Counted from the stretch's first letter, positions 1 through 45,868 are shown. The stretch is 64,000 nucleotides of DNA from Isurus oxyrinchus (GCA_026770705.1 JANJGN010000024.1:19964001-20028000); one strand, 5' to 3'. The notes: generated by a model from the letters alone, not told the origin. A program made the numbers and translations.

Positions 1-2
1 CC

Positions 3-6213: not shown

Positions 6214-6227
6214 GCCCTTAATGCACT

Positions 6228-7135: not shown

Positions 7136-7299
7136 ATGGTATCAGGCTTATTGCGTCCTCTGAAAGATTGCCAAGCACTTCTTGTGCTATTCTAAAGTGC
7201 AGCAATACGTTTTTACATTAATTTTCCTTTTAAAACAACTGAAAGGAAGGTTTTTCTAAACACTTTTTCGTTTCTTGGTGAAGAAGTCATATTTTTAAA

Positions 7300-7529: not shown

Positions 7530-8379
7530 GTAAGTTCCTTTTCTTTCTGAAACAGAAAAATGTTGAAGGAAAAGAATATTAGCTTTCATTCAAAAATTTC
7601 TGCTTTAATTGATAGATTTAATTTTAACTTGTCAGAAAGATCATACGGTTAAAATCCAAATTAACTAATAAGGTGTTTGTTCAGGAGGAATGTTCCCAAG
7701 TATAATGAAGTGTTCCTCTCACTCTATTGATAATTATTTTAATTATTTAATTATAATTATGATTTGTATAGTGCCTTTAATGGATGTGGATATTCAGTTA
7801 CTATGTCCAGCACAGAGATTGATAGGTTTATGGATACTATGGGAATTAGGGGTTAGTGCAGGAAAGTGGAAATGAGTTAGAAGATCAGCCATGCAAAATA
7901 GGCCCAAAAGGGCTTTATCCACAATTTCCCTTTCTCCACTCCTGAAGGTGCTGATTCTCACTGGGGTACAGGCCTGTTCTCTCCATAGGAGTGCCATAAG
8001 CTACAGTTGTCACCTCTCCAGTGTTTAATCCAATTTGTCATTCTTCATGTTTGAGCCTCCATTAGTGCATCAGCAGCTATTTGAACTTGGGAGTTGTTAC
8101 AGGTCAATCCTCTCCACTCCTCATGTCCATAATCATGCAATATCCAGCAGTGGTCACAGGGATGAGAGGCAGGAACCTGGCCTGAATTTGGCCATGAATA
8201 ATGTAGGTCCTGTTATTAAGACTTTCATTGGAACCAATATAATTCAACCTGAAATAAGGATTGGACCTGTTAATGGATGGAATCCTACATAGCTAAACAC
8301 TGGCTTATGCATCAACCCCAACAACAATTTGAGAATTCAATCTGCAGTCTCTAATTTCACTGCTTGTCTTCCATTTTCC

Positions 8380-8850
8380 ATTCTCAGTCAGCTTAACTAA
8401 TCTAAATCTCTGCTGCTGGTATTCCTACTCCTACAGGTCCCGTTCAATGATCACCTCCTACGCTCACTAACTTGCATTGGATCTGGGTTTGGCAATGCCA
8501 CGATTTTAATATTCCCATCCTTCTATTCAAATCTCTCCATGGCCTTAGCCCTCCCAATCCCTTCAACCTGCTCCAGCCCTGCAACCCTCTGAAACCTTTG
8601 TGCTCCTCCAATTCTGGCCTTTACGCAATCCAGATTTTTATCACTCCACTATTGCCAGCCATACCTTTAGCTGTCTAGACCCTTTCTTCCTGCTTCCTCT
8701 ATTAAGACACTGTTTAAAGCTTAGGTCCTTGACTAAGGTTTAGTTAGTTGTCAGAGTATCTCTTTATGTGGCTCAGAGTCAAATTTTGTTTGATAATTCT
8801 CCTGTAAAGTATCTTGGGATGCATTTAAAGGCGTTATATAAATGCAACTT
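8380..8850 (+). mobile_element. L2/CR1-like LINE 3' fragment
   Basis: Pyrimidine-rich family repeated at 32530, 42720 and 49745, and on the minus strand at 34690 and 43410. Confidence 0.6.
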
Positions 8851-8893
8851 GTTAATATCATTGATTAATTTCCTGTGTTTCTCTCCATAGGTG

Positions 8894-8945
8894 ATGAAGA
8901 GTGGAATGGGCTTCTTCTTGTTCCTTTCGTCTCTTATGTTCTATG
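8894..8945 (+). CDS. JAML: JAML-like Ig receptor, coding exon 1 (signal peptide MKSGMGFFLFLSSLMFY)
   Basis: Acceptor ctctccatAG at 8890, ATG at 8894, donor G|GTAAGA at 8946 (phase 1), hydrophobic leader. Confidence 0.75.
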
Positions 8946-8959
8946 GTAAGAGTTTCTTA

Positions 8960-9380
8960 GAGGTCTAGTAAATTGGGCTTATATTCTCTGTAGTTTAGAA
9001 GAATGAGAGATGATCTTATTGACACCTACAAACTTCTGAGGGGGCTTGATATGGTAGACGCTGAGAGATTTTTTTCTATTGGTCAGGGAATCTAAAACAT
9101 GGGCGTACAGTCTCAGACTAAGGGGCCGACCATTTAGGACTGTGATGAGCAGCAATTACTTCACTCAAAGGGTTGTGAATCTTTGAAATTCTTTTTCTTG
9201 GGGGTTGTGGATGCTCCATCATTGAATACATTTAAGGCCGGGATGTCTCAGGGAATCAAGGGATATGGAGAGTGGGCGGGAAAATGGAGTTGAAGCCAAG
9301 ACCAGTCAAGCTTGTATTGAATGGTGGAGTATGTTCAATAGGCCATGGGGTCTACTCCTGCTCCTATTCCTTGTGTCCTG
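8960..9380 (+). mobile_element. CR1-type LINE 3' fragment
   Basis: Matches other CR1 tails in the window. Confidence 0.65.
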
Positions 9381-9784
9381 GTGTTTGTTTATTGAGAACA
9401 GGGATAGAACAATGAACTATTATGCTGAAGTGTTTTGAGTCTTAACTGTAATTGGAGATAAAGTTGCCAACTCTGGTTAGATGCATGACCCGCCCACCTC
9501 TAACCACCCCACACTTAGGTCATTGGTCCATTCTCAGTGCGTCTGCATTGGACATTTAAAATAATGGGCCCCAAGGGTTGAGTGCTGGGACCAGCACCTG
9601 GGCATATCGAGCTAAATTGGTGATTTGTTTTACACCTAGAAGCAGTGGGGGAAATGGATCGCTATGTGTACTATTAATGGGAAGGATGGAAACACCAGCC
9701 CAGTGTGGCATGGAACCACGCAGACCAGGGAGGTCCCAGTTTTAATTTATGGGCCAGTATTGACCACAGCCTAGTCAGTAAAAG

Positions 9785-10200
9785 GACATGCATTTAAATA
9801 GCACTTTTCATAACCTCATGACATGCAAAACACTTTGCAACCAATGAAGTATTTTTGAAGTGTAATCATTGTTGTAATGTAGGAAACTCTAATGCAGCCA
9901 ATTTGAGCACAGCAAGGTCCCACAAACAGCAATATGATAATGACCAGATAATCGTTTTAGTGATGTTGGTTGAGGGATAACTATTGGTCTAGACATGGGG
10001 AGATCTCCCTGCTCTCTTGGAAATGGTGCCATGGGATCGTTCGCACCCACTTGAGCAGGCAAATGAGGCCTCAGTTTAATATATCATCTGAAAGACAGCA
10101 CCTCTGAGAGTGCAGCACTCCCTCAGATTTTTGTATTCAAGTCCTGGTGTGAGAATTGAACCCAAAACGTCTGCCACCAGGGTAAGAATGCTATCCACAG
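9785..10200 (-). mobile_element. Deu-domain SINE
   Basis: Reverse-complement core agtgcagcactccctcag. Confidence 0.7.
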
Positions 10201-11080
10201 AGCCCTGCCCTTTTCCCAGAATCCTTTAACCCCCTATCCTCTAGCCACATATCTAACCTATTCTTAAATGTAAATATGGAGGGAATTTTCAATGGACATT
10301 TGTTTGGGCCGTTGAATCTCGCTAGGTGGGTCCCGCCATGATGGGGCTGGAAAACCCCAGCCATGGTCTCTGTTTCATTCACTATCTTTGGTAGTGAACT
10401 CTACAGCCTCATGACTCTCAACTTTTTCTTGCTCTATGTCCTAAATCTCTTTAATATAATCTCACCTCTATATCCGTTCATTCTAGACTCCTCAACCACT
10501 GGAAAAACTATGGAGGCAATTAGAACCCACCATTGGGCAGTTAATGGGATTGGGGGCAATGCAGGTTTTACCCTCGGCCCGATTTTGCTCTTCATTCAAG
10601 TCAACATGGAGCAATTTTGGTCATCCCATCCCAACCCCGTGGAATTTCCACCAGATGAATAAAGTTAAAAAAGACCCCTTCTGTTTCTGTCTACTCTGTG
10701 CCTTCCATTCATAACATTAAACTCTATCAAATCATTCTGTGTACAAGATAAGAACTGGGAGCAGGAGTAGGACATAGGATCCCTAAAGCCTGTTCTGCCA
10801 TGCAATAAGATCATGGCTGATCTTCCACCTCAACTCCCCTCTCTGACCCTGTCCCCATATCCCTTGAATCCTTTACTAGCTAAACATTTATCTACCTCAA
10901 TCCTGAATATATCCAATGACTGAACGTCCACAGCTCTCTAGCACAGAGAATTCCAAAGATTCACAAGCCTGTGAGTGGCAACCTAAATGGCCATTCCCTT
11001 ATCCTGAGACCATGAACATTAGTTCTAAACTCTTCAGCCAGTGGAAACAGCCTCTCAGCGTCTACCTTGAAGAACTCCAT

Positions 11081-11743
11081 GGGGAGGATCTTCTGGTCAG
11101 CAAGCTGGGTGGGGCCCGCTCGCCAACATGTAAAATGACAGGGAATGACGTCGGGAGTTCCTCTGACGTCACCCTGCATCATTTCAATTTTCAGGTCGGC
11201 TGGGGCTTAGCCGAGCCAGCTGTGCCCGCTGACCTATCAACGGCCTATTGAGGCCATTAATAAAACAATTTAAATAATTAACAGGGCTGCCCGTCCAACC
11301 TTAGGGTTGGCGGGTAGGCCGGGAGCCCTGGTGGGCTTCAGAAAAAGCATGAAACCTTATCCACAGGTGAGATGAGGGTTTTTAAATATTTAATAAAGGT
11401 TTGAGTTAAAGTGATGGACATGTCCCAACTCTTGTGACAGTGTCACATGAGGGGACATGTCAGGGAAATGTGGATATCATTTCTTCCCATTTTAAAATTT
11501 TGAGCTGATCCCCCTGAGGCAGCACTTAGCCTCAGGGAGGTCAGTGTGCTCTTTCATGTGCATGTGCGAAAGAGCACACTCTCGGCTGAGGGAATCCCCC
11601 CCCGCCCGCACAGGAAGCACATAGCTTCCTGGTGGACATCACGCTTGATGGGCCTTAATTGGCCTGCCCACTTAAAATGGCAGCGCGCCCTCCTGCACCC
11701 ACTCCTGCACTTCACCCCACCCAATGGGAGGAAAAGTTTCCCC
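11081..11743 (+). mobile_element. Harbinger-type MITE nested in a minus-strand CR1 fragment (about 10745-11830)
   Basis: Imperfect TIRs GGGGAGGATCTT / AAAAGTTTCCCC, 3-bp flanks cat/tat; the CR1 sequence resumes after it. Confidence 0.7.
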
Positions 11744-12914
11744 TATATATTTCAATGAGACCACCTCTCGTCCTTCTAAACTCCAAAGAATATAAACCCA
11801 CTCTACTCAAACGCCCTTCGTGGAACAGCTCTCTCAACTATGTTCTAATGAATCAAATACACTATGGCTTAGATGTAAGTGTTTAAAGCAACCATTTGGG
11901 TTTCAGGATTCATATCCCTTGTTCAAACTGCCCAAGTTGGTGATTAGTTCGATCCCAGCTGTCACTTTAAGTGAAGAAATGTTATTTACATTAGGCGTAG
12001 TTCCGTTGCTTTACAGGAGAGCACAGCAATTGTAATTTACTGTAAAGAGGAAGAAGCCACTCCAGCAGATCCTTCCCACCATCCCCACCCCACACACCCC
12101 ACCAACCATACCATGAACTACCCACAGTTTCCCCCTTTCCAGACAGCTGACGTTGACTTTGAAAGTAGCTTTCTTACTGTGAAGCAAAGTAACTCTTAAC
12201 AAGGCACTATTATCCAGGCTGGTGCTCTGATGCAGGACTGAGTTTGGGGCTACCTTGACAGAGATTCCATATTCCACATGGGACAGGAAACCAAGAACGC
12301 ACATGGCTTTAGGTAGTGTTCTCCAACGTGGGACTCCTTGTTTCAAATTGGCCTTACTCTGTGCAGGAAGATCTGCAGATGTTTTAATAACCCTGTTTCA
12401 CTGTTTGGTGGCATGGACAACATCAACTCGCTTTTGTTTAAGGAAGATATACATAGAAGCCAGCACAATTTGTTGAAGGCAATCATGTTTGACTAACTTG
12501 ATTGAGTTTTATGATTGGTCAGGGTGATTCAGTTGATTTGTATCTATGGACGGAAAAACGTTGTTTGATAAAGTGCCAGATAATAGCCTTGTTAGGAAAT
12601 AATGAAGCCTATGAGATGAAAGGAGTAGTCAGTGGCAGCACTGATACCTAATTGACTAAAGGATGGAAAGCAAAGATAGTTGTTAGCAATTGTTTTTCAG
12701 ACTGAGGAAAGTGTGCAGTTGTGACCCCAGGGAGCATTGTAAAGATCACCGCTCTTTTTGATAATATATGCTGGATGCTGCACACATGTGGTTCTTGAGC
12801 CTGGCAGTGATTCAGTTATCATTGCATTGGCCAGTAATTTATGTTAATGCATATTAGAGGTCAAGTAACAGAGTTTGGTTTGTGCTGAGAAACAATGAGT
12901 ATCGGATACCCAAC

Positions 12915-13900
12915 ATTAAATCGAGAGTTTATAAATAGGATTGTATGTAGCCAAGAATGGGTTACAGGCTGGAATCTATCGCAGGTTTCAAGCAGTTTAC
13001 ATGTAGCATAACAGATACCCAGGAGTAAATTACAGTCCAGAATCTAATCGAGAGGTTTGGGCAGTTTATGGGCAGAATTTTGCCCTTGTCGGGCGGGCTC
13101 GGTGGGGCGGACGGGTGGGGTTGGGAAGTTGACTGTCGTCGACGATCGGGGCCGGACCGTAATTTCACGCTGATGGGCCAATTGAGGCCTGCCAAGTGTG
13201 AAACACGTGCTGCAGCGCTCAGTACTGCCTGTGTGGGGAGGGGAGGAGGCCGAGCGGGGAGCTTCATGTATGCGTGGGGGTGTCACATGAGCAAGGGGGA
13301 CATGTTAGAAATCGGGATGAAATCTTTTTTTTTTACGTGACGGAATGAAACCTCATTCCGCCCGTGGATGAGGCTGGGCAAAAAAAATGCAAAGGCCGCT
13401 TGGTCTTTTCGCCTGCCCACCAGCTGTAAGGTTGGATGGGCAGTGAAAAATTTAAATCAGTTGGATTGTTAATGGTCTTAATAGGCCTTTTAATTGTCAG
13501 TGGGCACACAGCCAACTCACGCGTGCGCCCGCCGATCGAAATATTGCGCGAGTGCGCGATGACATCAGGACACTCGCCTGACGTCACCGCGCGTCACCTT
13601 ACGCTCGTTCGGGTCGGGCGCATGCCTGTCTGACAAATGAAAAGTTCTACCCTATGTGTAGAATAACAGGTACCCAAGGAGCAAGTCTGGAATCAGTGAT
13701 TTATATGTAAAATAACAGGTAGCCAGGAGAGAGTTACAATCTGGAATCCGATCGAGGGGTTCAGCGTGTTTATACTCAGGACAGAGTTACAGCCTGGAAA
13801 CTAATTGAAGCTTTTGGGTGGTTTATACAGAGAATAACAGTAATCCAAGAGAGTGTTACAGTCTGGAATCTGATCAATGGGTTTGGGTAATTTATGAAGG
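12915..13900 (+). repeat. Degenerate ~70-bp tandem satellite interrupted by a MITE
   Basis: Recurrent unit aataacagRtacccaggag..ttacagNctggaatctaatcgaggggtt. Confidence 0.7.
13070..13652 (-). mobile_element. Harbinger-type MITE
   Basis: TIRs GGGCAGAATTTT / AAAGTTCTACCC, exact TAT target duplication; related in reverse orientation to 11081-11743. Confidence 0.8.
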
Positions 13901-14009
13901 ATAGTTGGTGTAACATCACCAAAAGGGGAAATAAACCCATTGCCAGCCATCACAGGTACTGAGGCTTCTATCAATCTACAGGCATTGCCTGTTTGTTCCT
14001 GCTCCGTAG

Positions 14010-14176
14010 GTATCTGCTCAATCTTAGCTATTGGTGTCTCCACCCCAAATTCCTTGGTTGTGGAGGAGGGAATGGAGCTACGGCTGGACTGCAAGCTGGG
14101 ACATGCGGACACTCAATTACACAACATCAAGCTGGAATGGTCCTATACCCCTTACACTGGTGCTGAAGAGGACTTG
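14010..14176 (+). CDS. JAML: JAML-like coding exon 2 (first half of the Ig V domain)
   Basis: gctccgtAG acceptor; GICSILAIGVSTPNSLVVEEGMELRLDCKLGHADTQLHNIKLEWSYTPYTGAEEDL; donor GTGAGT; 167 nt, phase 1-0. Confidence 0.85.
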
Positions 14177-14414
14177 GTGAGTGTTGTGTTCCAGTGCTCT
14201 GTGTCAGATTCTGTGACTGCACTCTACCACCAGCTTCTCACCCTCTTGTCTTTAACTCAAGTGTGGTGTCTGCATGTTGTCATTTTAGGGCCACTGTAAT
14301 ATCGGCCAGAGTTTTGACTGTCTCTGGGGAATTTTTACACAAAAACTGTAGCAGGTGTGCACCAAAGCTCCAAATGATGGGAAATCACTGGGTGACAGCT
14401 CTGGTTTACCTCAA

Positions 14415-15065
14415 AAGGCTCTGAGAGTAAGTTTAGATTTAGAGGCTAGCAGCTAATGCAATAGGGAATCCCAAAGTCTTCTATAGGCATATAAACAGTA
14501 AGAGGATGTTAAAAAAGAGGTGTAAGGACCGAAAGAGGATTTACACATGGAGGCAGGAGACATGGCTAAGATATTAAGTGAATATTTCACATCTGGCTTG
14601 ACCAAGGAAGAAGACGCTACCCAGGCCATGGGGAAAAAGGGGGAAATTCAGCTACTATAAGCGTTTAAAATTGATAACAAGGAGGTACTGGATTGGTTGA
14701 GTGAACTTAAAGTTGACAAGGCACCAAGACCAGATAAGATGTATTCAAAGGTATTGGGAGAAGCAAGAGTGGAAAGTGCAGATGCATTGGCCATAATTTT
14801 TTAGTCTTCTTTAGACTCAGGGGTGGCGTCAGAAGACTGGAGAATTGCAAAAATTACACCCTTGTTCAATAAAGCTGGTAAGAATATGCCCAGCAGCTAT
14901 AGGCCTGTCAGTTTAACTTTGATGGTGGGGAAACTTCTAGAAACTATAATTTGGGACAGAATTAATAGTCACATGGACAAATGTGGGTTATTTAAGGAGA
15001 CCCAGCATGGGTTCCCAAGGAAAAATTGTGTTCAACTAACTTGCTGGAGTTTTTCAAAGAGGTAA
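14415..15065 (+). mobile_element. CR1 LINE ORF2 fragment (RT N-terminal region)
   Basis: EDWRIAKITPLFNK...YRPVSLTLMVGKLLE. Confidence 0.85.
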
Positions 15066-15410
15066 CCTGTTTCATCCCTGGGAGAGTTTGATGGGGACAG
15101 CATAGAGGGAGCTTTACTCTATATCTAACCCCGTGCTGTACCTGTCCTGGGAGTGTTTGATGGAGACAGATGTGGGAGCTTTACTCTGTATCTAACCCCG
15201 TGCTGTACCTGTCCTGGGAGTGTTTGATGGGGACAGCGTAGAGGGAGCTTTACTCTGTATCTAACCCCGTGCTGTACCTGTCCTGGGAGTGTTTGATGGG
15301 GACAGCGTAGAGGGAGCTTTACTCTGTATCTAACCCTGTTCTGTGCCTGTTCTGGGAGTGACTGATGGGGACAGTGTAGAGGGAGCTTTACTCTGTATCT
15401 AAGCCTGTTC
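15066..15410 (-). repeat. 69-bp tandem satellite, about 5 copies
   Basis: Reverse complement of the 37240 array unit; 23-aa period visible in the ORF track. Confidence 0.9.
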
Positions 15411-15448
15411 TTTCTCTTCAATTACATTCCTTCTTGATTCCAACACAG

Positions 15449-15665
15449 ATTTTTTTTCACTATCAAAACCTCAGTGTGGTCGTGCAGAATGGTACATTCT
15501 CCATGAGACTTCAGTGGATTGGTGACATCCGACAAAACAATGGTTCCATTCTCATAACTAAAGTGGAGTGCAGTGACAAAGGTTATTTCACTTGTGATTT
15601 GCGGATCCCCAGGTTATCCAGTAAAATCTTTACAAGCAGAATTGATCTAAAAGTCTTGTGCGCAG
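15449..15665 (+). CDS. JAML: JAML-like coding exon 3 (second half of the Ig V domain)
   Basis: IFFHYQNLSVVVQNGTFSMRLQWIGDIRQNNGSILITKVECSDKGYFTCDLRIPRLSSKIFTSRIDLKVLCA; DxGxFxC motif; cAG...G|GTAATG; 217 nt, phase 0-1. Confidence 0.88.
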
Positions 15666-15689
15666 GTAATGAACTAAGTTGCTGTACCT

Positions 15690-15945
15690 CAATACATTGG
15701 GAGTGAATGGGAAGGAATTTGAGCCTTTGGGATTCAAAACTCTGGGAGTGAACGAGAAAGGAATTTGTCTATTAGGATTGTATGCACTGGGAATGAATGG
15801 GAAGGTGTTTGGTCCATTGGGATTCAGTATTCCAGGAGTGAATGAGAAAAGGTTTCATCCATTGGGATTGCATGCACTGGGCATAAATGAGAAAGGGCTG
15901 ATCCACTGGGATTCAATACTCTGGGAATGAATTGGAAAGGGTTTA
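15690..15945 (+). repeat. Degenerate 45-bp minisatellite, about 5.5 copies
   Basis: Unit approximately ctgggagtgaatgRgaaRggNtttgNtccattgggattNNatNcN. Confidence 0.75.
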
Positions 15946-16204
15946 TGTCATGTGTGCATTATGTAGAGTTTAACTCAATGTTGTGAGTAAGCTAGGATTA
16001 AGCGGTAACTATGTAAGACTTTTCTACTCACCTCTTGTTTGCCATACCCCATAAATCAAATTAATGGATGAAATATTCTGCACAGCATTCCCCATGTTCT
16101 CATGCATGTAGCTAATGGGTGGGGCCTTCAATAAAGAGAGAGCAATCACAAAATCAATCTTTGTATTAATGAGACTGCCAAGCATCCAGAAACCTAATTG
16201 AAAT

Positions 16205-16590
16205 AAGAAAGAATTTACATTTATATAACTCTATTACATCCTTAAGACATACCAAGATGCTTTTCAATCAATGAATTCCTTTCAAGTGCATTTAATGATG
16301 TTATATAGATAAGCATAGCAGTCAACTTTCACACAAAATACCACAAACAACAATGAGACCAATTAATCTGGTTCGGTGGTGTTGGTTGGGAAATAAACCT
16401 TGATCAGGACACTTCGACCTTCTTTGGATAATATTGTTGGCTATTAAACATTTACCTCAATAACCAGGTTTGGCATCTCATTCAAAAGATGGCATCTTTG
16501 AGTGTGCAGCATTCTTTAAGTGTTGCATTGATATGTCGGCCTAAATTCTGTGCTTAAATCTGGGAGCAGGGATTTAATTGACTGTCGTTG
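16205..16590 (-). mobile_element. Deu-domain SINE, old copy
   Basis: Diverged reverse complement of the family. Confidence 0.55.
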
Positions 16591-16720
16591 GTGAGATTGC
16601 TACCGAGCCATGAAAGACTTGTTTCTTTTGTGAAATTGCTGCTTTTTTGGGTGTTGGGAGGTGGGGGATGGGGTGTGGTGAGGCAGAGATTTTGTATCTG
16701 AGCATTTCTATTCCCTTCAG

Positions 16721-16889
16721 GTTCCAAAGGTACAAGATCTATCAGGCATCCAGGGTTAGCAGAAGCAGTTCCAAAGAATATTATCATATATACAACAGTG
16801 GGGATTTTCAGCTTCTTTGGTGCACTGTCTATTATCCTTGTAAGTGTATGGAAGAAATGTTCAATAAACACAGCACCAAGGAGTCAAAG
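16721..16889 (+). CDS. JAML: JAML-like coding exon 4 (stalk and transmembrane helix)
   Basis: ttcccttcAG; GSKGTRSIRHPGLAEAVPKN-IIIYTTVGIFSFFGALSIILVSVW-KKCSINTAPRSQ; AG|GTAATA; phase 1-2. Confidence 0.85.
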
Positions 16890-16996
16890 GTAATACATTG
16901 AGGAGGGAGAATTTAAATGAGTTTTATTGTTACCTTTCTTTTCACACAAAGAATAATTCTGAACTTTCTCCCTCATTTTCTGTGGTCATTAAGCAG

Positions 16997-17030
16997 AAGA
17001 AACTGTCCTGGCGGGCTTGAAGATTTTGAG
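16997..17030 (+). CDS. JAML: JAML-like coding exon 5 (34-nt cytoplasmic micro-exon RRNCPGGLEDFE)
   Basis: Needed to join phase 2 to phase 0; strong donor GAG|GTAAGG; tandem AAGCAGAAG acceptors. Confidence 0.7.
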
Positions 17031-17634
17031 GTAAGGGTTTTAATGCAGACTTTTAATAATCCAGAATATTAAATATTCAGTCATTTCCTCAGTCACTGAA
17101 ACTTTAAGATCAATTGCCAACTTCAGGTCAAATGGATTGAATGTTCTTCCAGAGATTCTTCATAGTTAGAGGGACATCTACCAAACACTTCCTTTCCCAT
17201 CATAGTTGGAAGGTTGATCTGTTTGAGATTTATAGGGTAATGAAGAGAATAGATTGTGTCCAAGTTGACAGTTTGTTCAATATAAATAGATTAGGGAGAA
17301 CCAGGAGTCACAATTTTTAATTATATGAGGCTAGACCAAGGTTAGATGTCAGGAGTTGGCTCTTTTCCCAAAGAGTAGTGAACACCCAGAACAGGCTGGT
17401 GGCTTACTTGGAGGGCACCAATTCACTGAAATCTTTCAAGTAAGAGCTGGACCTGTTTGGGGTTGGGGCAGGCATCACCTCTTACAAAAACTAGTTATTC
17501 CAGGGAATTCAGGACCTAGATGAGTTGGAAAAGAATTTCCCAAATGTTTTCCCCCAAATTGGCTTGGTTTTCAACCTGGTTCCTTTCCTCTCCCAGGAGA
17601 TTGCATGGTTTTTGGTGGAGTGGAGTGTTCATTT

Positions 17635-18085
17635 TCTTTTATTCACTCTCAGAATATCGCTGGCAAGGTCAGCATTCATTGTCCATCCTCAATTGCTCTT
17701 GGGAAGGTAGGTGTGCCACCTCCTTGAGAACCATGTGGTGTAAACACGCCCATAGTACTACTTTTCTGTAGCAGTTTGATACAACTGAGTGGCCATATCA
17801 GAGGGCAGTTAAGAGTCAGCCACAATGCTGTGGTTCTGGAGTCCATGTAGGCCAGACCAGGTAAGGATGGAAGATTTCCTTGGCTAAAGGACATTGGTGA
17901 ATCAGATGGATTTTTACAACAATCCAATAGTTTCATGATCATCATTAATGAGACTAGACTAACATTTTTTCCAGATTTATTTATTTGAATTTGAACAGCT
18001 GCCCTGTTGGGATTTGAACTCGTTTCTTCTGAGCACTAATAAGGGCTTCTGGGTAACTAGGCCAGTCATATCACCACTATGATAC
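17635..18085 (-). mobile_element. SINE family B
   Basis: Reverse complement of the 4986/42361 family. Confidence 0.7.
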
Positions 18086-19154
18086 CAATATTACAATACT
18101 CAAAGTGTAGGCCAAGCTGGTGGAACAAAGGGTCTTTTACAATCAGTCACTATTTGTATGTTTGTAAGTTTCATCCAACTTCTAGCCCATATGGTTAACC
18201 ATGTGAATAAACCATGTTTAAACTCCACAGACTAGAAAGGAGATTGTTTGGACTGGACTAAATGAGATTTATAGAATATTAAGTGGTATGGATATTAGTT
18301 TGAATGAAATCAGGGTTATGACGGCCAGACATTATAAATTTAGATGAGTGAGTATTAAATTTAAAATTGGCATTACTTAAAATGTGAGAAATGTCTGTAA
18401 TGATCTGTTAGGCAGGGGTATAGAAATTCTGGGTCCAGCATTTGGGCAGCAGTGGGATACTGGAGGATCGAGTTTCAATAGGAATATTGGGGTTCAGGAA
18501 AGATGGGATTAGATACACTGGAGAGATGGTTTTTATTAACCTAATGGTGTTTTCTTATCCTTGACTGCTTTTGGTATGGTGATGTGATCAGCAATTTACC
18601 ACATAAGATCATTAAATTTGCTGTCTGCTTCTATTCCGAAAACTTTTGAGAATTATCTCAACTGTTGGGTGGTGTTGGAGACAATTGTTACTCAGAAATA
18701 TTTGTTTCGTTGCTTCAGTTTCCTCCTTTCCTCTCCTGAAGGTCCTGGTCCACAGGTGCTGTCAGCTTCCAGCATTGCAGTGAAGCCAATCATTCCTCAC
18801 GTAGGAATCTAAACAGTGAATGTTGGCAAGTTATACCATCAAGGAATAAAAGCTGTGCCTGGCTCTGTCTTTACCTGGCAGCAATTCTCCAGAAGGAATC
18901 ATTAGATCAGGGGAAGGAACGACAGCTGATGTTCCTCTGACAGGGGCTCAGAAGTCAAATGTGCGACTCTAATTCAGCTGAAAGCAGCTGGTTGATGATG
19001 GGATCTGGGCCAGAGTGTTGCGTCCCACACAACCTGGACCCAATGAGGCATTGGAGAAGCACAAGAGGGGATTGGGAGGACCTAAAATAGAAAGGGAAAG
19101 GCTAGAGAATAGCCAGTTACAACTCATTAAACTAATATGTTCACCAACAATCAG

Positions 19155-19280
19155 GATACAGGCCATTACGTCACTGTGACCAGCAGACACCCGCTCCAGA
19201 TTGACAGAGAAAATAAAGCCATGAAGGTGAAGAAAACTAAGGAATCAAAGACTGGTGAAGAAGAAATTTATGTAACAATG
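19155..19280 (+). CDS. JAML: JAML-like coding exon 6 (cytoplasmic, YVTV and YVTM motifs)
   Basis: cAG|DTGHYVTVTSRHPLQIDRENKAMKVKKTKESKTGEEEIYVTM|GTAAGA; 126 nt; ends in YxxM like the JAML YMTM motif. Confidence 0.8.
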
Positions 19281-20025
19281 GTAAGATTGTTGGGAAACAA
19301 TTACTTCAGCATGATTTAAATATTTGACATTGCACAGTGCCTGCATGACTAGCTGATATTCATAGTGAGGAATAAATCATAGAAACACAGAAAGTTTTAT
19401 GGCACGAAAGGAGGCCATTTGGCCCATTGTGTCTGTGCCAGCTGTAAAATCCAATCTAATCCCACCTCCTAGCTCTTGGTCCATAGTCCTGTACCTTACA
19501 GCACCTCAAGTGTATATCCAAGTATCATTTTTTCAGTGCTATCCATCCATTGCATGCACACGTTGTGTAAAGGCATTTTAGTAACAGAACCTGGCTGACA
19601 GGTTCATCGCTTTTTGAGTAATCTCAATCACACCTACTCAATTTGCTACCATATCCCTTAATCATACCCACTCACTTTTCCATTCTATCTCTCGATCCTT
19701 TTTTTCACCAATTCACTCACTCCCATGTCCCATCTCCTCATCAAATCCCTCAATTCTTTCCTTTCTCCAGAAGTATAGCCACAGTACGTTCCCTCGATCA
19801 AGGGCATTTAGTGCCTGATCAACTCGACATCGGGAAAGCAATCCTGCTGAGAGCCAGGCGTATGCTGTCTGATCCCATGGGCTAGGCTGCAATTTATGCT
19901 CCAATTTAACTCCTCTTTGTGTGAGAAAGTTCACCGTGATTTCTCTTCTTATTCTTCTCTCGCTTGTTTGTCACTTGGGTCCACTGGGATGTGAACAATT
20001 TGTCCAATTCAGTACTGGTCCCAGA

Positions 20026-20753
20026 GGACGGAATGTTGTTGAGGCATCGGGGTCCTGCCTGCCACCTGGAGCCGGCAAGAAACCTGCGCTGCCTGTTTTT
20101 GTGAAGGCCCCCCCGCCTAACCACAAGCCAATCAGGCAGTGATGAGGCCAGTGGCAGGCTTTCCCCTGGAATTAAGACCCCAAGGGCGCAAGCCTCACTT
20201 ACCGAGAGCTGCTGGCCAATCAGAGGCCAGCAGCTTTTGTTCTCAGCAGTGCCACAGTGGAGGCCCAGGATCGTGCAGTATCCCAGGCCACAGGTAAGCA
20301 AAGTCGAAATGGCAGGGAGAGGGGTGTAGCGGGGTCAGCAGCAAGAGTTGGGGTGGGGGGGGGTGGTGGCTCTCAGTGGGCTTGCCTTCCTGATGTCGAG
20401 TTCGATCAGGCACTAAGTGCCTTTGATTGAGGGACCACACCTCCCCCATTCCTCCCCTCCCCCACCACCCATCCCCAGAGCTGATAAGCTGGCTGCACGG
20501 TTTTAGCTGCTGTGCACACTGCATAGCGACAGACCCGCCTGCCGCAGGGTTAATGCCAGGGAGGCCGTTAAGTCATTATTAACTAGCCACTTAAGGGCCT
20601 CACTTGGTGCTGAGGCAGGAAGTTCAACCATGTGCCTTCCTTCCCAGGACTTAATTCTGGGCGAGGCAGGAAGATGGTGGAATTCCGGTACACCACCATC
20701 CCACCTAATTACACGCCTTTTCCCGCCTCCAGAGAGGGCAGAAAATTCCACCC
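20026..20753. mobile_element. Harbinger-type MITE (GC-rich)
   Basis: Ends GGACGGAATGTT / AAAATTCCACCC resemble the GGGCRGAATTTT TIR. Confidence 0.6.
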
Positions 20754-20881
20754 ATAATCTCAAACATTTTACGGTCAAAGACTTCTCCAAAGGAAATAAA
20801 GTCACATCCATTAAAAAAAGCCTTGATTCCTAATACAAGGAATTATCACTTCTATATCTTCTCAATATATCTTCTCAGGCC

Positions 20882-21193
20882 TAAGGTTCCCAACACTAAA
20901 GGATTGGAGTCTCCAGGAATTGAAGACTGATCTCCTGGACATCACTTCAAGTAATCGTGGAGAAAAACCATGCAGCTCTAAAAAAAAAATTCATAATCTT
21001 TTAACACTTTTGTTTCATAGTTATAAAAGTAACAGATATGGGGAAAAAAAGCTGACAGACAGCCAAGAATAATACAATCGGATAATTTGGGAAGGCAATG
21101 TGCCATGAGGATTGTTGGGCAACCAAAAGTGGGCGTGGATGGATCATTCGATGACACCTCCAGGAATACATCCAACTAGAGTTGGCAACCCTA
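20882..21193. mobile_element. Non-autonomous DNA element with TAGGGTTGCCAAC-type TIRs (hAT-Blackjack-like)
   Basis: taaggttcccaac ... gttggcaacccta; no clear TSD. Confidence 0.55.
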
Positions 21194-21249
21194 GTCACAG
21201 CCCCAGCCAACTTTATCTTCATTGGGTACTTACATGAGTGAACCTTTAT

Positions 21250-21830
21250 AGAAAGAAGATCTTGCATTTATACAGCACCTTACATGAACTCAATGTGTCC
21301 CAAAGCACTTTACAGCCTTTAACTTAAGTGTAGTCATTGTAGTAATGCAGGGAACCTGGCATCCAATTTGCACACAGCAGGATCCCACAAATAGCAATGT
21401 GATAACATCAGACAATCTGTTTTGTTGGTGGTGTTGGTTGAGGGGTTAGTGTTGTCTGGGGCATTGGGAAGAACATATCCTGATGGGTGAGATTACTGCC
21501 CACTGAGCCATGGCTGACACAGAAAGTGTTCACAGGTTAAAGGCCAGAAAAATGGGTCTTGGTGACTTTTCTCTTCCTGAACCTAGGACCAACTAAGACC
21601 AACTTTGGCACCTCAATTTATTTTGGAGTCAGTGTAAAGAAGGAAAGACTTACATTTATATACTTTTCACAACCTCAGGATACAAAACACTTCACAACCG
21701 GTGAAGTACTTTTGAAATGTAGTCACGGTTGTACTGTGAGAAAATATGGCAGCCAATTTGTGCACAGGAAGCTCCAAAAAACAGTCATGAGATAAATGCC
21801 CAGTTGGACTGTTTTGTTGGCGTTGGTTGA
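21250..21830 (-). mobile_element. Two Deu-SINE 3' fragments (21250-21520, 21640-21830)
   Basis: Family tail in reverse complement. Confidence 0.6.
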
Positions 21831-22316
21831 CTATACACCAAGGGTTAAATCTATGACCTTACCAGTCTCTATGCGATGGCTACTCATCAGGGGAGCAGTT
21901 TCTTAATTGGTAAAAATTCCACCTCATGAAACAGTCCTCTTGAGGGGATTCAGGATAATAGACACTTCCAAGCTGGGAGAAGAAATATGTATATTTTAAG
22001 TAACTTCGGTCCTTCCCTGATATATTCAAGATCAAGGGCTGTGATTGTGTTACACCATATGCATTGCAAATTAATTTCCAATCTGTTCCTCAGACAAGCC
22101 ATGGCTGGTACATATTATGGGGACAATTTGGCAGGATCATGCCTTGGGGAGTCTCACCTACCTGTTGTATATTTTAGGAGGTCATGGAGCAGTGCAGTGA
22201 TTTTCCCAGATGAACTATTCTGCCCATGAGGGAAAACTCCGAAAGTTAGCCTGGAGTGTGAAAATTATCCCGTGTGTTTTGTTCCTAAGGTTTTCCTGTC
22301 TCTCTTTTGTCCCCAG

Positions 22317-22400
22317 CGCTCGTTCATAGGAACTGGGAAATCAAATGACCTTCCTAAACCTATCGTACTCAGTGATCCTATTTATGGAGAATGTGGGTAA
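22317..22400 (+). CDS. JAML: JAML-like last coding exon (RSFIGTGKSNDLPKPIVLSDPIYGECG*)
   Basis: Long polypyrimidine tract plus cccAG, phase 0, TAA at 22398-22400, unique 3'UTR. Confidence 0.7.
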   Translation, partial: RSFIGTGKSNDLPKPIVLSDPIYGECG

Positions 22401-22699
22401 TCCCACTCTATGGATTTTCTGGAATCTAACAGATCATTGGAACTTTTTGAGGCTGTATTCATCATTTTGTTAACAGCAAATAGACACCCACAATTCTTCA
22501 AGACTGTGTTCGATGGTTCTGGTTTGATGGAGTGACTGAAATTCCTGCCACAAGACTGGTTCCCTAAATTTTCATTTTTTTTCAGCCTTTTTCAAAACCA
22601 ACTGGTTCTGTTTTATTGCATTAAGAAGCACAATGCCACTTCTGGGTCTAACTTTGAAAATATTATATTTTAATGTTTGCAAAGAGATAACTGTGAATG

Positions 22700-22705
22700 A
22701 ATAAA
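22700..22705 (+). terminator. Poly(A) signal of the JAML-like gene
   Basis: AATAAA 300 nt after the stop, followed by a GT/T-rich tract. Confidence 0.55.
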
Positions 22706-23567
22706 TGTTCTGTGTTTTGTCCATTTCTCTAGTTCCAGATGGTGGTGTTAAGGGGATACCACTTCAATGAAAAAACTTGTATCAAATTTGTTTCTATTTT
22801 GCTTAGAAGCTGGGGATGAAGTTCAATTTTTATCATGAACTCAAATGTGTTTCAGTGATACTTTCCAATCCGGTTTTTGTGCCGTTGAGTACCTGTAAAC
22901 AAACAAAATGTTTGCCATCACTCATGAAGAATATGTCCCTTTAATGCAGTTTGACGGTGTAGTTTTGAATTCTGTTTGTTCTGTGTACTAAATCTCATAG
23001 AGGAAGTAATCACATCAGATACAAAAACAGAAAATGCTGGAAATACTTGGCAAATCTCGCAGCATCTATGGCAAGGGTGGGGAACCTTTCTCTTATCACA
23101 GGCCTTGATTGGTAAGGGGATCAAAGGTTATGGGGAGAAGGCAGGAAAATGGGGTTGAGAAACTTATCAGCCATGACTGAATGGCGGAGCAGACTCGATG
23201 GGCCGAATGGCCTAATTTCTGCTCCTATGTCCTATGGTTTTATTCACGCATGGACAAAATTAGTCATGGGCCACACACACCTAAAAATCAACTTAATTTA
23301 GTTACTTTAGAGCGAACACAGAAATGTTCTACTCACCCACTGTTTTAATGAGATGGCTGAATTTGAACATTATGATGTTAAGTATTATTATAGTAATTTA
23401 GCTGACGCTTTTATCCAAAGCAAATTCGTAACAATGATGGTAAATGTTATTTTGAAGGCATTACTATCATAGGTCTACATTTTTAGAAATCTTGCTGCGG
23501 CCAAATGAAATTGAGCAATGAGGCAGATCCGACCCATTGGCCATAGATTCCCCAACCCTGGTCTATG

Positions 23568-44011: not shown

Positions 44012-44222
44012 TTTGTCCAGTTCCGGCGCAAGGTCATCATCCCCAGAAATGACCGCTTTTCAGGCAGGGTGGAGTGGTCAGGGAACCTCAAAAAGAACGA
44101 CGTGTCGGTCACTATTCACGACATCCAGCTCGGTGATGAAGGCTTTTACAACTGTTCTGTGTTAAACCCTCCTGACAGACACAACGGATGGGGATTAATC
44201 TACCTGAGAGTGGTCACAGAAG
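44012..44222 (+). CDS. SCN2B: SCN2B exon 3 (missed by the ORF track)
   Basis: FVQFRRKVIIPRNDRFSGRVEWSGNLKKNDVSVTIHDIQLGDEGFYNCSVLNPPDRHNGWGLIYLRVVTE; 211 nt, phase 0-1. Confidence 0.95.
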
Positions 44223-45868
44223 GTATTGTAAAATAATATTGTTATCTAAGTCACTTTATCTCCAGTCTTTGGCATGCCTGCCCAGCCCCTGTCTATGATT
44301 TTCCATTGCATTTTCTCTCTGTTTGCCGCTATTTCTGTTCCTTTGTATCCTGTAATTGGTCTTCTACCCCCCTTCCCCACCACTGACTAACCATCTGTCA
44401 AAACCAAATTTGGAATTAGTGCCATTTTATAATTGATTAAATGATTCTTGAAGAGATAAAGAAAATTAAAGCAAATTTGAACATTCTATAATGCCTCCAT
44501 GAAGCAGCACAGGTGATGTTTGGCTGGAAGATGAGAAAATTGCCTCTGGGTTGGACCCTGCATCACTCCCTGACTGATAGGAAGAAGGTCTCTTTTTGAT
44601 GGCTGCAGGATGAAACGGATTCCATCCTTGTGTTTCAAGGCTCTCCTGGCCAGCCCCCAAACTTCCACCCGCCATAAACTTGAGTTCATCCAAAAGGGCC
44701 GCTGCCTGTATCCTAACACACCAAGGGCGGAACATTCTGTGTCCGCTGGCGCCGGGCGTGATAGGTGGTGTCAGCGGACAGTATGACACGATCGGTTTCA
44801 CAACGGCGGGAAGGCAGGGTCACGGTTGTCCGCTCAGCCCGCTGACAGCGGGCCACGTTTTCCGCCAGCGGTCATCGGGAACCTCATTGTAACACATCAG
44901 CAAATCATTATCAGGCCGTCCCGCCAGGCTCAGCGACCCCCGCTGGATCGTCCGTCCACGTTGGCGGGAAAGCACGCTGGCGTGTTTCACAACGGCACAG
45001 AGGTGACGTGCACTTGGCGGCCTTCGCTTTGGGTGAACTGGAGGTGAGTGAACAGCAACGTTCTGTAGAGCTAGCTAGTGTTGCCTGTTGCTTTGCAGGC
45101 TTCAGGGACGCCGGGGTAGGGGTTAAGTGCCACCCTGCCCGACCAGTGGTAGGGAGGGGGATCAGGGGGCAAGTGTAGCCCCTGCCTTTGAGGCGACTTT
45201 TGAGAGTGAGGGGGAGCAGGGGGGCAAGTGTAGCCTTGCCGTTGAGGCGACTGGTGAGGGCGGACAAGTGCAGCCTTGCCGTTGAATGTAGCGCACAAAC
45301 ATTCAGGGTGGGGGGTAGGGTGGGTGAGGGAAGTGGCCAAGCATTCGGGAAACCTGTAGAAAGTGATTATTCCTCTGCAACTGAGACAGTTCAGATGCAG
45401 CCACATTGATATGACTGTGGTCAGGCTCCTATCTTATCTGCCCACTCAAGCAACTCAGAGGCATCAAAGTGCCACCAAGTTCTGCAGAGCTCCCTCCCCA
45501 CCCCAACCTCCTTCCGACCCCCACCCACCCACCCAGCACAGACTGCAAATTCATAAGCACTTGAGTGGACTGCAGAGCAGTTGGACTGCACGTGTTGTAC
45601 AATCTCCTCGCTAGAGCTGGCCATTGAGCAGTCACTGCTGGAGGGGATCACAGCCTCTTGTAATGTCAGCATTCTGGTTTGGACCAGTCTCCCCTAAGGT
45701 TGCAGCTGACAGGGCACCATGCAGCGCACTAAGTGGCACTATCCAAGTGGTGACAAGCACTCTCCAGGAAGTGTTAAGGGGCTGTCACACTTAACCGGGA
45801 CAGGTTCCTAGTGCACCCATGCTAACCACGTGCCTCCCTCTTTCATGCTGCAGGAGTACATCAGGATC

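What the first reader, a model, noticed from the sequence alone, without database searches (positions are those of the whole stretch)
8894..22400. JAML-like co-stimulatory receptor with a single Ig domain
Seen: seven phase-compatible exons give a 282-aa protein with a leader, ONE V-set domain, a stalk, a TM helix and a tail. The 1055-bp intron between the V domain and TM exons holds only a minisatellite, a SINE and short unique sequence, with no second domain. Known: mammalian JAML lies just upstream of SCN2B, has two V domains, binds CAR mainly through D1 and co-stimulates gamma-delta T cells via a YMxM PI3K motif. As I recall human D1 (YYYSNLSV, GDILCNDGSLL, CEIRL), it matches FHYQNLSV, GDIRQNNGSIL and CDLRI here. 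Inference: this is a pre-duplication or reduced JAML, which would place JAML-CAR-type signalling near the base of jawed vertebrates.
Basis: partly seen in the sequence, partly recalled or inferred. Interest (0 to 1): 0.8.

Follow-up and report, generated by a model that had tools for sequence, protein, structure and literature searches.

The report
Shark JAML gene, one Ig domain
This is a real, transcribed shark gene for a small immune-type surface receptor, the counterpart of mammalian JAML but with one outer domain instead of two, and similar genes are already predicted in other sharks, rays, turtles and birds.

Summary
Seven phase-compatible exons on the + strand (8894-22400) encode 282 aa, or 283 with a NAGNAG acceptor: leader, one V-set domain split over two exons, stalk, TM helix and tail. 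Spliced contigs in four public runs show the exon 2-3 junction. Three of them show the V exon joined directly to the TM exon. No second Ig exon or remnant exists in window 1-30000.

Trees place the domain in a starred clade (100/99) with mammalian JAML D1 and D2, turtle and bird JAML and coelacanth JAML, apart from MPZL3, MPZL2 and MPZ. The tail ends in E-E-I-Y-V-T-M. This Y-x-T-M motif occurs in 28 of 29 full-tail JAML-clade proteins and in 0 of 53 MPZL3/MPZ proteins. SCN2B lies downstream on the same strand.

Mammalian D1 and D2 group together, and sauropsid JAML models are single-domain, so a single domain looks ancestral.

Caveats: AU tests do not formally reject the rivals (p 0.06-0.12). 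Foldseek ranks MPZ above JAML. CAR binding and co-stimulation are untested.

Orthologues are already in RefSeq for 12 elasmobranch species, two of them named JAML. This is a new member of a known kind, of modest interest.

The parts
8894..8945 (+). Exon 1: start codon and most of the signal peptide (17 codons plus 1 nt, phase 1).
   Evidence: ATG at 8894 and GTAAGA donor at 8946. tblastn of Cetorhinus P0122 residues 1-18 gives 88.9% identity. Not covered by the laid stretch. X1 contig record 1 has 31 letters ahead of E2 (table 8).
14010..14176 (+). Exon 2: end of the leader and the first half of the V-set domain, including the B-strand Cys.
   Evidence: AG acceptor and GTGAGT donor. JAML-clade profile E 2e-13. 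85% identical to Cetorhinus. Joint 14176|15449 in 4 of 4 runs.
15449..15665 (+). Exon 3: second half of the V-set domain (C' to G strands). It holds three N-glycosylation sequons, the F-strand Cys and two further Cys.
   Evidence: Pfam V-set E 5.7e-8. PDB mouse JAML E 2.3e-16 over two stretches, MPZ 1.5e-10. Profile E 6.5e-30. Tree placement. Sequons and Cys counts.
15666..16720 (+). Intron 3 (1055 bp) between the V exon and the TM exon. It has no Ig-coding potential.
   Evidence: Skipped as GT..AG in X1, X2 and X3. No V-profile hit better than E 5.6 inside it. Only self-similarity of the minisatellite.
15698..15944 (.). Minisatellite inside intron 3 (period 45/90 bp, about 5.4 or 2.8 copies).
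   Evidence: Tandem Repeats Finder and blastn self-hits.
16721..16889 (+). Exon 4: stalk, TM helix and basic stop-transfer stretch (phase 1 in, phase 2 out).
   Evidence: Sequence. 89% identical to Cetorhinus. Joints on both sides in 3 runs. Helix 164-194 in the model of the Cetorhinus orthologue.
16997..17030 (+). Exon 5: 34-nt cytoplasmic micro-exon. The alternative NAGNAG acceptor at 16994 gives 37 nt.
   Evidence: Candidate list. 93% identical to Cetorhinus, which has the extra Ser. The contigs of X1-X3 use 16994.
19155..19280 (+). Exon 6: cytoplasmic exon with two conserved tyrosine motifs (Y-V-T-V near its start, E-E-I-Y-V-T-M at its end).
   Evidence: Sequence. Motif counts. Both Tyr, plus T and M, are invariant in 19 of 19 aligned elasmobranch and sauropsid proteins. 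Covered by contigs in 4 runs.
22317..22400 (+). Exon 7: last 27 codons and the stop.
   Evidence: Polypyrimidine tract and CAG acceptor, in frame. 79% identical to the Cetorhinus C-terminus. X1 and X3 contigs run on past E6.
44012..44233 (+). Neighbour gene SCN2B, second V-domain exon. This is the synteny anchor and not part of the gene itself.
   Evidence: phmmer against PDB: human sodium channel beta-2 E 2.3e-20, beta-4 9.3e-5. A further SCN2B-like TM/tail open stretch lies at 52149-52406.

Best explanation
The locus is the orthologue of JAML (junctional adhesion molecule-like, AMICA1) in a shark. The shark is probably a lamniform, judged from 77-93% identity to the basking-shark protein.

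The gene encodes a type I membrane glycoprotein. It has a signal peptide, one V-set Ig domain of the sodium-channel-beta/MPZ subfamily, a short stalk, one TM helix and a tail of about 80 aa. It is transcribed and spliced as seven exons. All of this is shown.

The single-domain form is most likely the ancestral state. The two-domain mammalian protein most likely arose by an internal duplication of the V-domain exons after the split from sauropsids. This is inferred from trees and from the distribution of architectures.

Likely mechanism (inferred, not tested): the V domain engages a ligand on another cell, by analogy CXADR/CAR. A Src-family kinase then phosphorylates the tail tyrosines. The phosphorylated Y-V-T-M recruits the p85 SH2 domains of PI3K, as described for the mammalian Y-M-x-M motif, and this gives a co-stimulatory or adhesion signal in leukocytes.
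For: Gene and transcript:
- Per-exon identity to Cetorhinus P0122 is.
- Spliced contigs were found in X1 and X2 (study P1), X3 (P2) and X4 (organism B, P3). The direct E3-E4 joint is in 3 runs.

Family placement:
- E3-only tree: a clade of 27 rows holds the window E3, 9 elasmobranchs, Latimeria, 8 sauropsid JAML and 8 mammalian D1/D2 domains. Support is 100/99 starred and the stem length is 1.08.
- Full-domain tree of natural proteins: the same clade of 26 rows has 100/99 starred support.
- E2-only tree: the same grouping, 95/68.

Signature motifs (chosen after seeing the alignment):
- C-[DE]-x-[RH]-x after the F-strand Cys occurs in 11/11 elasmobranch, 13/13 sauropsid and 4/5 mammalian JAML, and in 0/40 MPZL3 and 0/13 MPZ.
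- N-[PS]-P-D is the reverse: 0/29 against 52/53.

Tail:
- Y-[VMIL]-T-M occurs in 11/11 elasmobranch, 13/13 sauropsid and 4/5 mammalian proteins, and in 0/53 MPZL3/MPZ.
- Both tail tyrosines are invariant across 19 of 19 aligned sequences.

Synteny: SCN2B lies downstream on the same strand.

Single domain:
- Only 2 of 1361 open stretches hit V profiles.
- Each of the elasmobranch orthologue proteins from 12 species has one V envelope.
- 22 of the 26 relatives of turtle JAML have one envelope.
- Mammalian D1+D2 form one clade, 97/98 starred.

Function of the mammalian motif: passages of PMC8404475 and PMC3101210.
Against: AU tests on 123 columns do not formally reject the alternatives:
- elasmobranchs + MPZL2/3 held together: p 0.063;
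- elasmobranchs + MPZL3: p 0.076;
- D2 outside all other JAML-clade domains: p 0.118.

Per-domain pairwise scores favour MPZ slightly: 43.6 bits against 34.9 for mouse JAML D1.

Foldseek ranks MPZ, MPZL1 and SCN2B at ranks 1-10 and JAML at rank 11.

The E2 peptide alone finds nothing significant in PDB (best E 0.26, SCN2B).

No shark MPZL2 or MPZL3 was in the trees. The gene upstream is not in the window.

NCBI names 6 of the 12 orthologue proteins 'myelin protein P0-like' and one 'MPZL3'.

The laid runs are labelled RNA only by guess, and their tissue is unknown.

Nothing here tests ligand binding, phosphorylation or the cell type that expresses the gene.
Confidence: 0.75

Rival explanations
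1. It is a secondarily reduced JAML. On this view the two-domain form is ancient, and sharks, together with coelacanth and sauropsids, lost the membrane-proximal domain.
For: The AU test does not reject a tree with mammalian D2 outside all other JAML-clade domains (delta lnL 13.5, p 0.118). Concerted evolution between D1 and D2 could mimic a recent duplication. The E2-only tree does not resolve D1 from D2.
Against: D1+D2 form one clade at 98/93 and 97/98, both starred. Single-domain models occur in sharks, rays, coelacanth, turtles and birds, so this view needs several independent losses. There is no remnant of a second domain in intron 3 or anywhere in window 1-30000.
Confidence: 0.1
2. It is an MPZL3/MPZL2-type homophilic adhesion protein that happens to sit next to SCN2B, and not a JAML. 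On this view JAML is absent from sharks.
For: It has a single V domain with a split-V exon plan like MPZ-family genes. NCBI names 6 of 12 orthologue proteins 'myelin protein P0-like' and one 'MPZL3'. Foldseek's top hits are MPZ and MPZL1. MPZ scores 43.6 bits against 34.9 for JAML D1. The AU p values are 0.063 and 0.076.
Against: The JAML clade has 100/99 starred support in two trees. The N-P-P-D motif, present in 52 of 53 MPZL3/MPZ, is absent. The tail Y-x-T-M and a second conserved Tyr are shared with JAML and absent from 53 MPZL3/MPZ proteins.
Confidence: 0.08
3. It is a lineage-specific paralogue inside the JAML clade with a different job, for example a decoy or an inhibitory receptor. On this view the true functional counterpart lies elsewhere in the genome.
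For: Elasmobranch sequences form a long-stemmed clade (0.69). They have two extra conserved cysteines not seen in sauropsids or mammals. Some species have duplicated the tyrosine-motif exon.
Against: The HMMER scan of 1.84 billion representatives with E3 gave 112 hits. I looked up the names of 20 of them. The three elasmobranch representatives were P0003, P0005 and P0007, and each has a single matched stretch. The position next to SCN2B fits orthology.
Confidence: 0.05

Closest known systems
Mammalian JAML / AMICA1 (mouse ectodomain PDB 3mj6; complex with CAR 3mj7)
   Same: Both belong to the same V-domain clade. E3 aligns to D1 (34.9 bits) and to D2 (25.2 bits). Both are type I TM proteins. 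The tail has an acidic run followed by Y-[VM]-T-M and an upstream Y-x-x-[VI]. The gene is linked to SCN2B. Human linkage of JAML, SCN2B, SCN4B, MPZL2, MPZL3 and CD3 in one 11q23 deletion is stated in a passage of PMC9574220. The exact human gene order is recalled.
   Different: The shark protein has one V domain instead of two. It has two extra cysteines, one in the E-F turn and one after the G strand. Its tail is shorter. Ligand, expressing cells and signalling are unknown in sharks.
Sauropsid and coelacanth 'junctional adhesion molecule-like' RefSeq models (for example Carettochelys P0098, Numida P0147, Latimeria P0047)
   Same: They have a single V-set domain, a TM helix, and a tail with both conserved tyrosines. 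They fall in the same clade.
   Different: Overall identity is only 23-28%. They lack the extra Cys pair. Sauropsid tails carry a further Y-V-[EQ]-L stretch that sharks lack. These are automatic predictions, and I found no paper describing them.
MPZL3 and MPZL2 (EVA1)
   Same: They belong to the same beta/MPZ subfamily and have one V domain split over two exons, a TM helix and a tail. MPZL3 is the nearest outgroup of the JAML clade (95/98 starred for MPZL3+JAML).
   Different: They have N-P-P-D after the F-strand Cys (39 of 40 MPZL3) and no Y-x-T-M in the tail (0 of 40). They lie outside the starred JAML clade.
Myelin protein zero (P0) and sodium channel beta-2
   Same: These are the best Foldseek matches to the modelled orthologue (MPZ E 6e-12, TM by target 0.85; SCN2B 1.1e-10). 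The pairwise scores are comparable.
   Different: They form a separate starred clade. Their tails differ and lack the tyrosine motifs (0 of 13 MPZ).
CD28 / ICOS / CTLA-4 co-stimulatory receptors (a likeness in how it may work, not membership)
   Same: Both have one V-type domain, a Cys near the stalk, a TM helix and a short tail with a Y-x-x-M PI3K-type motif. The likeness of the JAML and CD28 motifs is stated in PMC8404475 (passage).
   Different: No CD28-family chain was among the 60 PDB rows shown of 91 matched for E3. I did not test a sequence relationship directly. The shark Cys count is even (4), which fits an extra internal disulfide at least as well as a covalent dimer.

Membership tests
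JAML (junctional adhesion molecule-like) | The V-set domain groups with JAML domains and not with MPZL2, MPZL3, MPZ or the SCN beta subunits. | tested here: met
   The clade has 100/99 starred support with the window's E3 and with natural full domains. The E2 tree gives 95/68. Caveat: the AU p values of 0.063 and 0.076 do not reject the alternative.
JAML (junctional adhesion molecule-like) | Two tandem V-set domains (D1, D2), as in the mammalian protein. | tested here: not met
   The window has one domain only. The same holds for the turtle, bird and coelacanth proteins that NCBI names JAML. This feature therefore defines the mammalian form, not the clade.
JAML (junctional adhesion molecule-like) | A cytoplasmic Y-x-x-M (PI3K p85-type) motif near the C-terminus. 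| tested here: met
   E-E-I-Y-V-T-M ends exon 6. The motif is shared by 28 of 29 full-tail clade members and by 0 of 53 MPZL3/MPZ proteins. This is tested at sequence level only.
JAML (junctional adhesion molecule-like) | A position in the MPZL2-MPZL3-JAML-SCN2B-SCN4B gene cluster, directly upstream of SCN2B on the same strand. | tested here: inconclusive
   SCN2B is the next gene downstream on the same strand. No gene is recognisable in 1-8800, so the upstream neighbour is unknown.
JAML (junctional adhesion molecule-like) | Binds CXADR/CAR through the membrane-distal domain. | not testable with these tools
   The paper with the contact residues (PMC2951132) is not held. No coordinates are available. 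No shark CXADR was retrieved.
JAML (junctional adhesion molecule-like) | Expressed on leukocytes (gamma-delta T cells, neutrophils, monocytes) and co-stimulatory. | not testable with these tools
   Only transcription and splicing are shown. The runs are coded and their tissue is not given.
MPZL3 / MPZL2 | The N-P-P-D motif after the F-strand cysteine, and grouping with MPZL3/MPZL2 in trees. | tested here: not met
   The window's E3 and 0 of 11 elasmobranch orthologues have the motif, against 39 of 40 MPZL3 (the motif was chosen after seeing the alignment). The gene lies outside MPZL3.
Immunoglobulin V-set domain (Pfam PF07686) | A match to the V-set profile above Pfam's gathering score. | tested here: met
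   E3 alone scores 33.4 bits against a cut-off of 26, covering profile positions 48-109. E2 alone scores 12.5 bits over positions 2-38, which is below the cut-off as expected for a half domain.

The most novel reading that the evidence does not exclude
The jawed-vertebrate ancestor already had a JAML that was a single-V-domain receptor with a Y-x-T-M PI3K-type tail, an architecture like CD28. The two-domain mammalian JAML is then a late internal duplication. In sharks this receptor pairs with CXADR to co-stimulate tissue gamma-delta T cells, so this co-stimulatory axis would be as old as the T-cell receptor system itself. An elasmobranch-specific extra cysteine pair may further make it a disulfide-braced or covalently dimeric form.
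Probability: 0.25. Interest if true: 0.6.

Novelty: new member of a known kind. Interest (0 to 1): 0.35.

Why it matters
The finding fixes the identity of a gene that public annotation names inconsistently. Among the 12 proteins, the names are 'myelin protein P0-like', 'MPZL3', 'uncharacterized', 'hypothetical' and 'JAML'.

It shows that the JAML lineage, with its PI3K-type tyrosine motif, predates the split of cartilaginous and bony vertebrates. It also indicates that the well-studied two-domain mammalian receptor is the derived form.

This gives comparative immunologists a concrete, expressed shark gene with which to test whether JAML-CAR co-stimulation of gamma-delta T cells is ancient.

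It is not a surprise at the level of gene discovery. Orthologues are already predicted in 12 other elasmobranch species and in many turtles and birds.

In seven searches that used JAML or its full name as a term I found no paper in the held library that describes single-domain non-mammalian JAML. One paper (PMC7916592, passages seen) dates 'JAMs' by BLAST only.

Tried and rejected
1. The E2 peptide against PDB and Pfam gave nothing significant (best PDB E 0.26; V-set E 0.17). It is too short to be informative alone.

2. The TM exon against Pfam matched no family.

3. Pairwise ranking as a way to tell JAML from MPZ was rejected. Whole-sequence E-values favour two-domain proteins because two stretches add up. 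Per-stretch scores are about equal.

4. The structure route did not discriminate. I folded the natural Cetorhinus orthologue with a 19-row alignment. Mean pLDDT was 60, the V domain scored about 70-89 and the tail under 35. Foldseek puts MPZ, MPZL1 and SCN2B ahead of JAML. This confirms the fold and the subfamily only.

5. The AU tests of three alternatives gave p 0.063, 0.076 and 0.118, so none is rejected.

6. A SINE in intron 3 was not verifiable.

7. Rfam on 8500-23000 gave no match.

8. The earlier findings of this scan hold nothing on JAML, MPZL or CXADR in this genome.

10. The CAR-contact residues could not be read. PMC2951132 and PMC3039130 are not held.

11. The literature search was too broad to be useful.

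12. Supplements were not opened. Those of PMC7916592 (BLAST tables) and PMC10506104 (gene files for MPZL2, MPZL3 and JAML) might bear on when JAML was first seen in cartilaginous fish.

13. My first reading gave MPZL2/3 even odds. The trees and the tail motif overturned that.

Full report
WHAT IS THERE

The + strand between 8894 and 22400 carries seven exons with canonical borders and compatible phases (sequence read; candidate lists).

| Exon | Coordinates | Content |
|---|---|---|
| E1 | 8894-8945 | start codon and leader, phase 1 |
| E2 | 14010-14176 | end of leader and first half of a V-set domain |
| E3 | 15449-15665 | second half of the V-set domain |
| E4 | 16721-16889 | stalk, TM helix, basic stretch |
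| E5 | 16997-17030 | 34-nt micro-exon |
| E6 | 19155-19280 | cytoplasmic, tyrosine motifs |
| E7 | 22317-22400 | C-terminus and stop |

The V-to-TM intron is 1055 bp.

E3 alone passes Pfam's V-set threshold (33.4 bits).

Every search used single exons or natural database proteins.

IS IT A REAL GENE?

A HMMER scan of 1.84 billion representatives with the E3 peptide gave 112 hits at E up to 0.001. The best single-stretch hits are predicted proteins of Mustelus asterias (76% identity), Heptranchias perlo (68%) and Mobula (54%).

A word search with the Heptranchias protein found 12 proteins at E up to 0.001 among 934 candidates. All are elasmobranch and all carry PF07686 only. With the two Mobula species this makes 12 species.

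The closest is Cetorhinus maximus P0122 (283 aa). Its pieces match all seven window exons at 77-93% identity. I infer from this that the window comes from a lamniform shark other than Cetorhinus.

Public runs were then laid on 14000-19300.
- Contigs of three runs of one organism join E2-E3-E4-E5-E6 in one record: X1 (777 nt), X2 (593 nt) and X3 (1119 nt), from two studies.
- The skipped parts end in GT..AG for three of the four joints.
- A fourth run, of a second organism (X4), matches the window without mismatch in two pieces and with one in a third. It shows the E2-E3 joint but does not cover E4 or E5.
- The V exon is joined directly to the TM exon in 3 of the 3 runs that cover it.
This gives the 283-aa form that Cetorhinus also has.
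- At the E5-E6 joint the contigs of organism A carry three letters that differ from the window's first three letters of E6. The same contigs differ from the window at seven further listed places: two in E2, two in E3 and two in E6 in all three runs, and one more in E2 (14050) in X1 and X3. I read this as a closely related species or a divergent allele.
- The runs are RNA only by guess. Spliced contigs are what argues for RNA.
- E1 and E7 were outside the stretch laid.

NO SECOND DOMAIN

tblastn of all stored proteins under 700 aa against the window (E up to 0.01) hit only the seven exons and two SCN2B exon regions near 40.0-40.5 kb and 44.0-44.2 kb. That set included two-domain mammalian JAML.

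Profiles of the V domain were searched with all heuristics off against 1361 stop-free stretches of at least 15 aa from both strands of 1-30000. They found E3 (E 6.5e-30) and E2 (2e-13). The next best hit had E 0.48.

Intron 3 holds a minisatellite (15698-15944). The remainder has no other copy in the window.

WHICH FAMILY?

Pairwise scores do not decide.
- Mouse JAML is the top PDB hit for E3 (E 2.3e-16), but that sums two stretches: D1 at 34.9 bits and D2 at 25.2 bits.
- MPZ scores 43.6 bits in one stretch.

I therefore cut V domains with a profile, aligned 48 rows and built maximum-likelihood trees.

E3 columns only, with the window's own E3 peptide and the window's SCN2B exon as outgroup:
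- One starred branch (100/99, length 1.08) unites 27 rows: window E3, 9 elasmobranch proteins, Latimeria JAML, 8 turtle and bird JAML, and 8 mammalian D1 and D2 domains.
- MPZL3, MPZL2-like and MPZ rows lie outside.
- Window E3 is sister to Cetorhinus (99/92 starred).

E2 columns only: the same 27 rows group at 95/68. This is not starred and carries a long-branch warning.

Full domain, natural proteins only: the JAML clade of 26 rows has 100/99 starred support. MPZL3 plus JAML has 95/98 starred support.

Against this, the AU tests do not reject the following:
- elasmobranchs held with MPZL2/3 (delta lnL 17.5, p 0.063);
- elasmobranchs held with MPZL3 alone (14.2, p 0.076).

No shark MPZL2 or MPZL3 was available for the trees.

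INDEPENDENT CHARACTERS

These motifs were chosen after seeing the alignment, so they are descriptive.

After the F-strand cysteine, JAML-clade proteins have C-[DE]-x-[RH]-x: 11/11 elasmobranch, 13/13 sauropsid and 4/5 mammalian, against 0/53 MPZL3/MPZ. MPZL3 and MPZ have N-[PS]-P-D instead: 52/53, against 0/29. The window's E3 follows the JAML pattern.

Exon 6 ends in E-E-I-Y-V-T-M. Counts for Y-[VMIL]-T-M:

| Group | With motif |
|---|---|
| Elasmobranch | 11/11 |
| Sauropsid JAML | 13/13 |
| Mammalian JAML | 4/5 (the fifth has Y-M-V-M) |
| MPZL3 | 0/40 |
| MPZ | 0/13 |
| Latimeria | model of 201 aa has no tail |

In an alignment of 11 elasmobranch and 8 sauropsid proteins, both tail tyrosines and the T and M are invariant.

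According to passages of PMC8404475, mammalian JAML binds CXADR, starts a PI3K cascade and shares the Y-M-x-M PI3K motif with CD28. PMC3101210 says the same of PI3K recruitment.

SYNTENY

The exon at 44012-44233 is SCN2B (human beta-2 E 2.3e-20, beta-4 9.3e-5). A matching TM/tail stretch lies at 52149-52406.

A case report lists JAML, SCN2B, SCN4B, MPZL2, MPZL3 and the CD3 genes in one human 11q23 microdeletion (passage).

Several Ensembl-type bird and crocodile models fuse an MPZL2/3 domain to a JAML-like domain (P0009, P0015, P0017). This hints that the two genes are adjacent there too.

PRE-DUPLICATION OR REDUCED?

Mammalian D1 and D2 form one clade (98/93, 97/98, both starred).

Of the 26 relatives of turtle JAML, the profile gave:
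- one V envelope in 22;
- two envelopes in one 518-aa bird model;
- two envelopes in two mammalian proteins;
- two halves of one domain in one protein.

Sharks, rays, coelacanth, turtles and birds are thus single-domain. One gain in the mammalian line is more parsimonious than several losses. However, the AU test does not reject D2 lying outside the rest (p 0.118). I did not sample amphibians, squamates, monotremes or marsupials.

STRUCTURE

The Cetorhinus orthologue was folded with alignment A1. It gives a confident V-type sandwich (block pLDDT about 70-89 for residues 21-140), a TM helix at 164-194 and a disordered tail.

Foldseek's best matches are MPZ (6e-12), MPZL1 and SCN2B. JAML is at rank 11 (4.4e-10). 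This shows the fold and the subfamily, not the orthology.

HOW IT LIKELY WORKS

Shown: a spliced mRNA for a glycosylated-type (three sequons in E3) single-pass receptor with one V domain and two conserved tail tyrosines.

Inferred:
- ligand binding through the V domain (CXADR by analogy);
- tyrosine phosphorylation;
- PI3K recruitment at Y-V-T-M.

Unknown: the expressing cells, the ligand, and the oligomeric state.

NOVELTY

The gene is already predicted in 12 other elasmobranch species. NCBI names it JAML in Narcine and Scyliorhinus canicula and otherwise inconsistently.

Seven searches of the held library used JAML or its full name as a term. They turned up no description of single-domain non-mammalian JAML. 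PMC7916592 only dates 'JAMs' by BLASTP (passages).

I rate this a new member of a known kind, with a modestly interesting evolutionary reading.

Noticed in passing
window 15077-15402: A 69-bp unit repeated 4.8 times (93% matches) lies in intron 2 and ends 46 bp before the E3 acceptor. Contigs of all four laid runs pile up here to summed depths of 10^5-10^6 in three runs and over 10^3 in the fourth. It is therefore a very abundant repeat family in these shark data sets.
   Followed up: partly
window 17717-17893: A second pile-up of contigs lies in intron 5, with summed depth up to 5x10^4, many loose ends and variant letters. It is probably an interspersed repeat.
   Followed up: no
window 16994-16997: Exon 5 has a NAGNAG tandem acceptor. 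Contigs of organism A and the Cetorhinus protein use the upstream site (one extra Ser, 283 aa). The Heptranchias and Heterodontus proteins correspond to the downstream site.
   Followed up: yes
window 19155-19157: In the contigs of X1-X3 the first three letters of exon 6 differ from the window (three other letters between the joint sides). X4 matches the window there. This is a species or allele difference that changes the first residue of the exon.
   Followed up: partly
proteins P0003 (Mustelus) and P0120 (Heptranchias isoform X2): The tyrosine-motif exon (E6 equivalent) is present twice in tandem in these proteins, giving two Y-x-T-M-type motifs. The window has one copy only.
   Followed up: partly
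window 15449-15665 and elasmobranch orthologues: There are two cysteines beyond the canonical pair, one in the E-F turn and one just after the G strand. They are conserved in 11 of 11 elasmobranch proteins and absent in sauropsid JAML. They may form an extra internal disulfide or a link between chains.
   Followed up: partly
proteins P0009, P0015, P0017, P0041, P0082: Bird and crocodile database models labelled MPZL2, MPZL3 or uncharacterized carry an MPZL-type domain followed by a JAML-type domain. They are probably run-on predictions across two neighbouring genes.
   Followed up: partly
window 14526-15062, + strand: Open stretches in intron 2 look like a fragment of a LINE reverse transcriptase. 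This is my reading of the translation. No family scan was run.
   Followed up: no
window 44000-50000 and 50426-51468: Inside SCN2B there is a G+C-rich block (0.53 against about 0.43 elsewhere) with long open stretches. One is a 190-aa stretch at 46102-46671 that looks like a DDE transposase. A 268-aa reverse-transcriptase-like stretch lies at 50665-51468. These labels come from my reading and were not tested.
   Followed up: no
runs X7-X11 against X4: The DNA runs of 'organism A' hold only 0.46 of the sampled words of the stretch. Contigs of 'organism B' match the exons almost perfectly. The window's species is probably organism B, and organism A is a close relative.
   Followed up: partly
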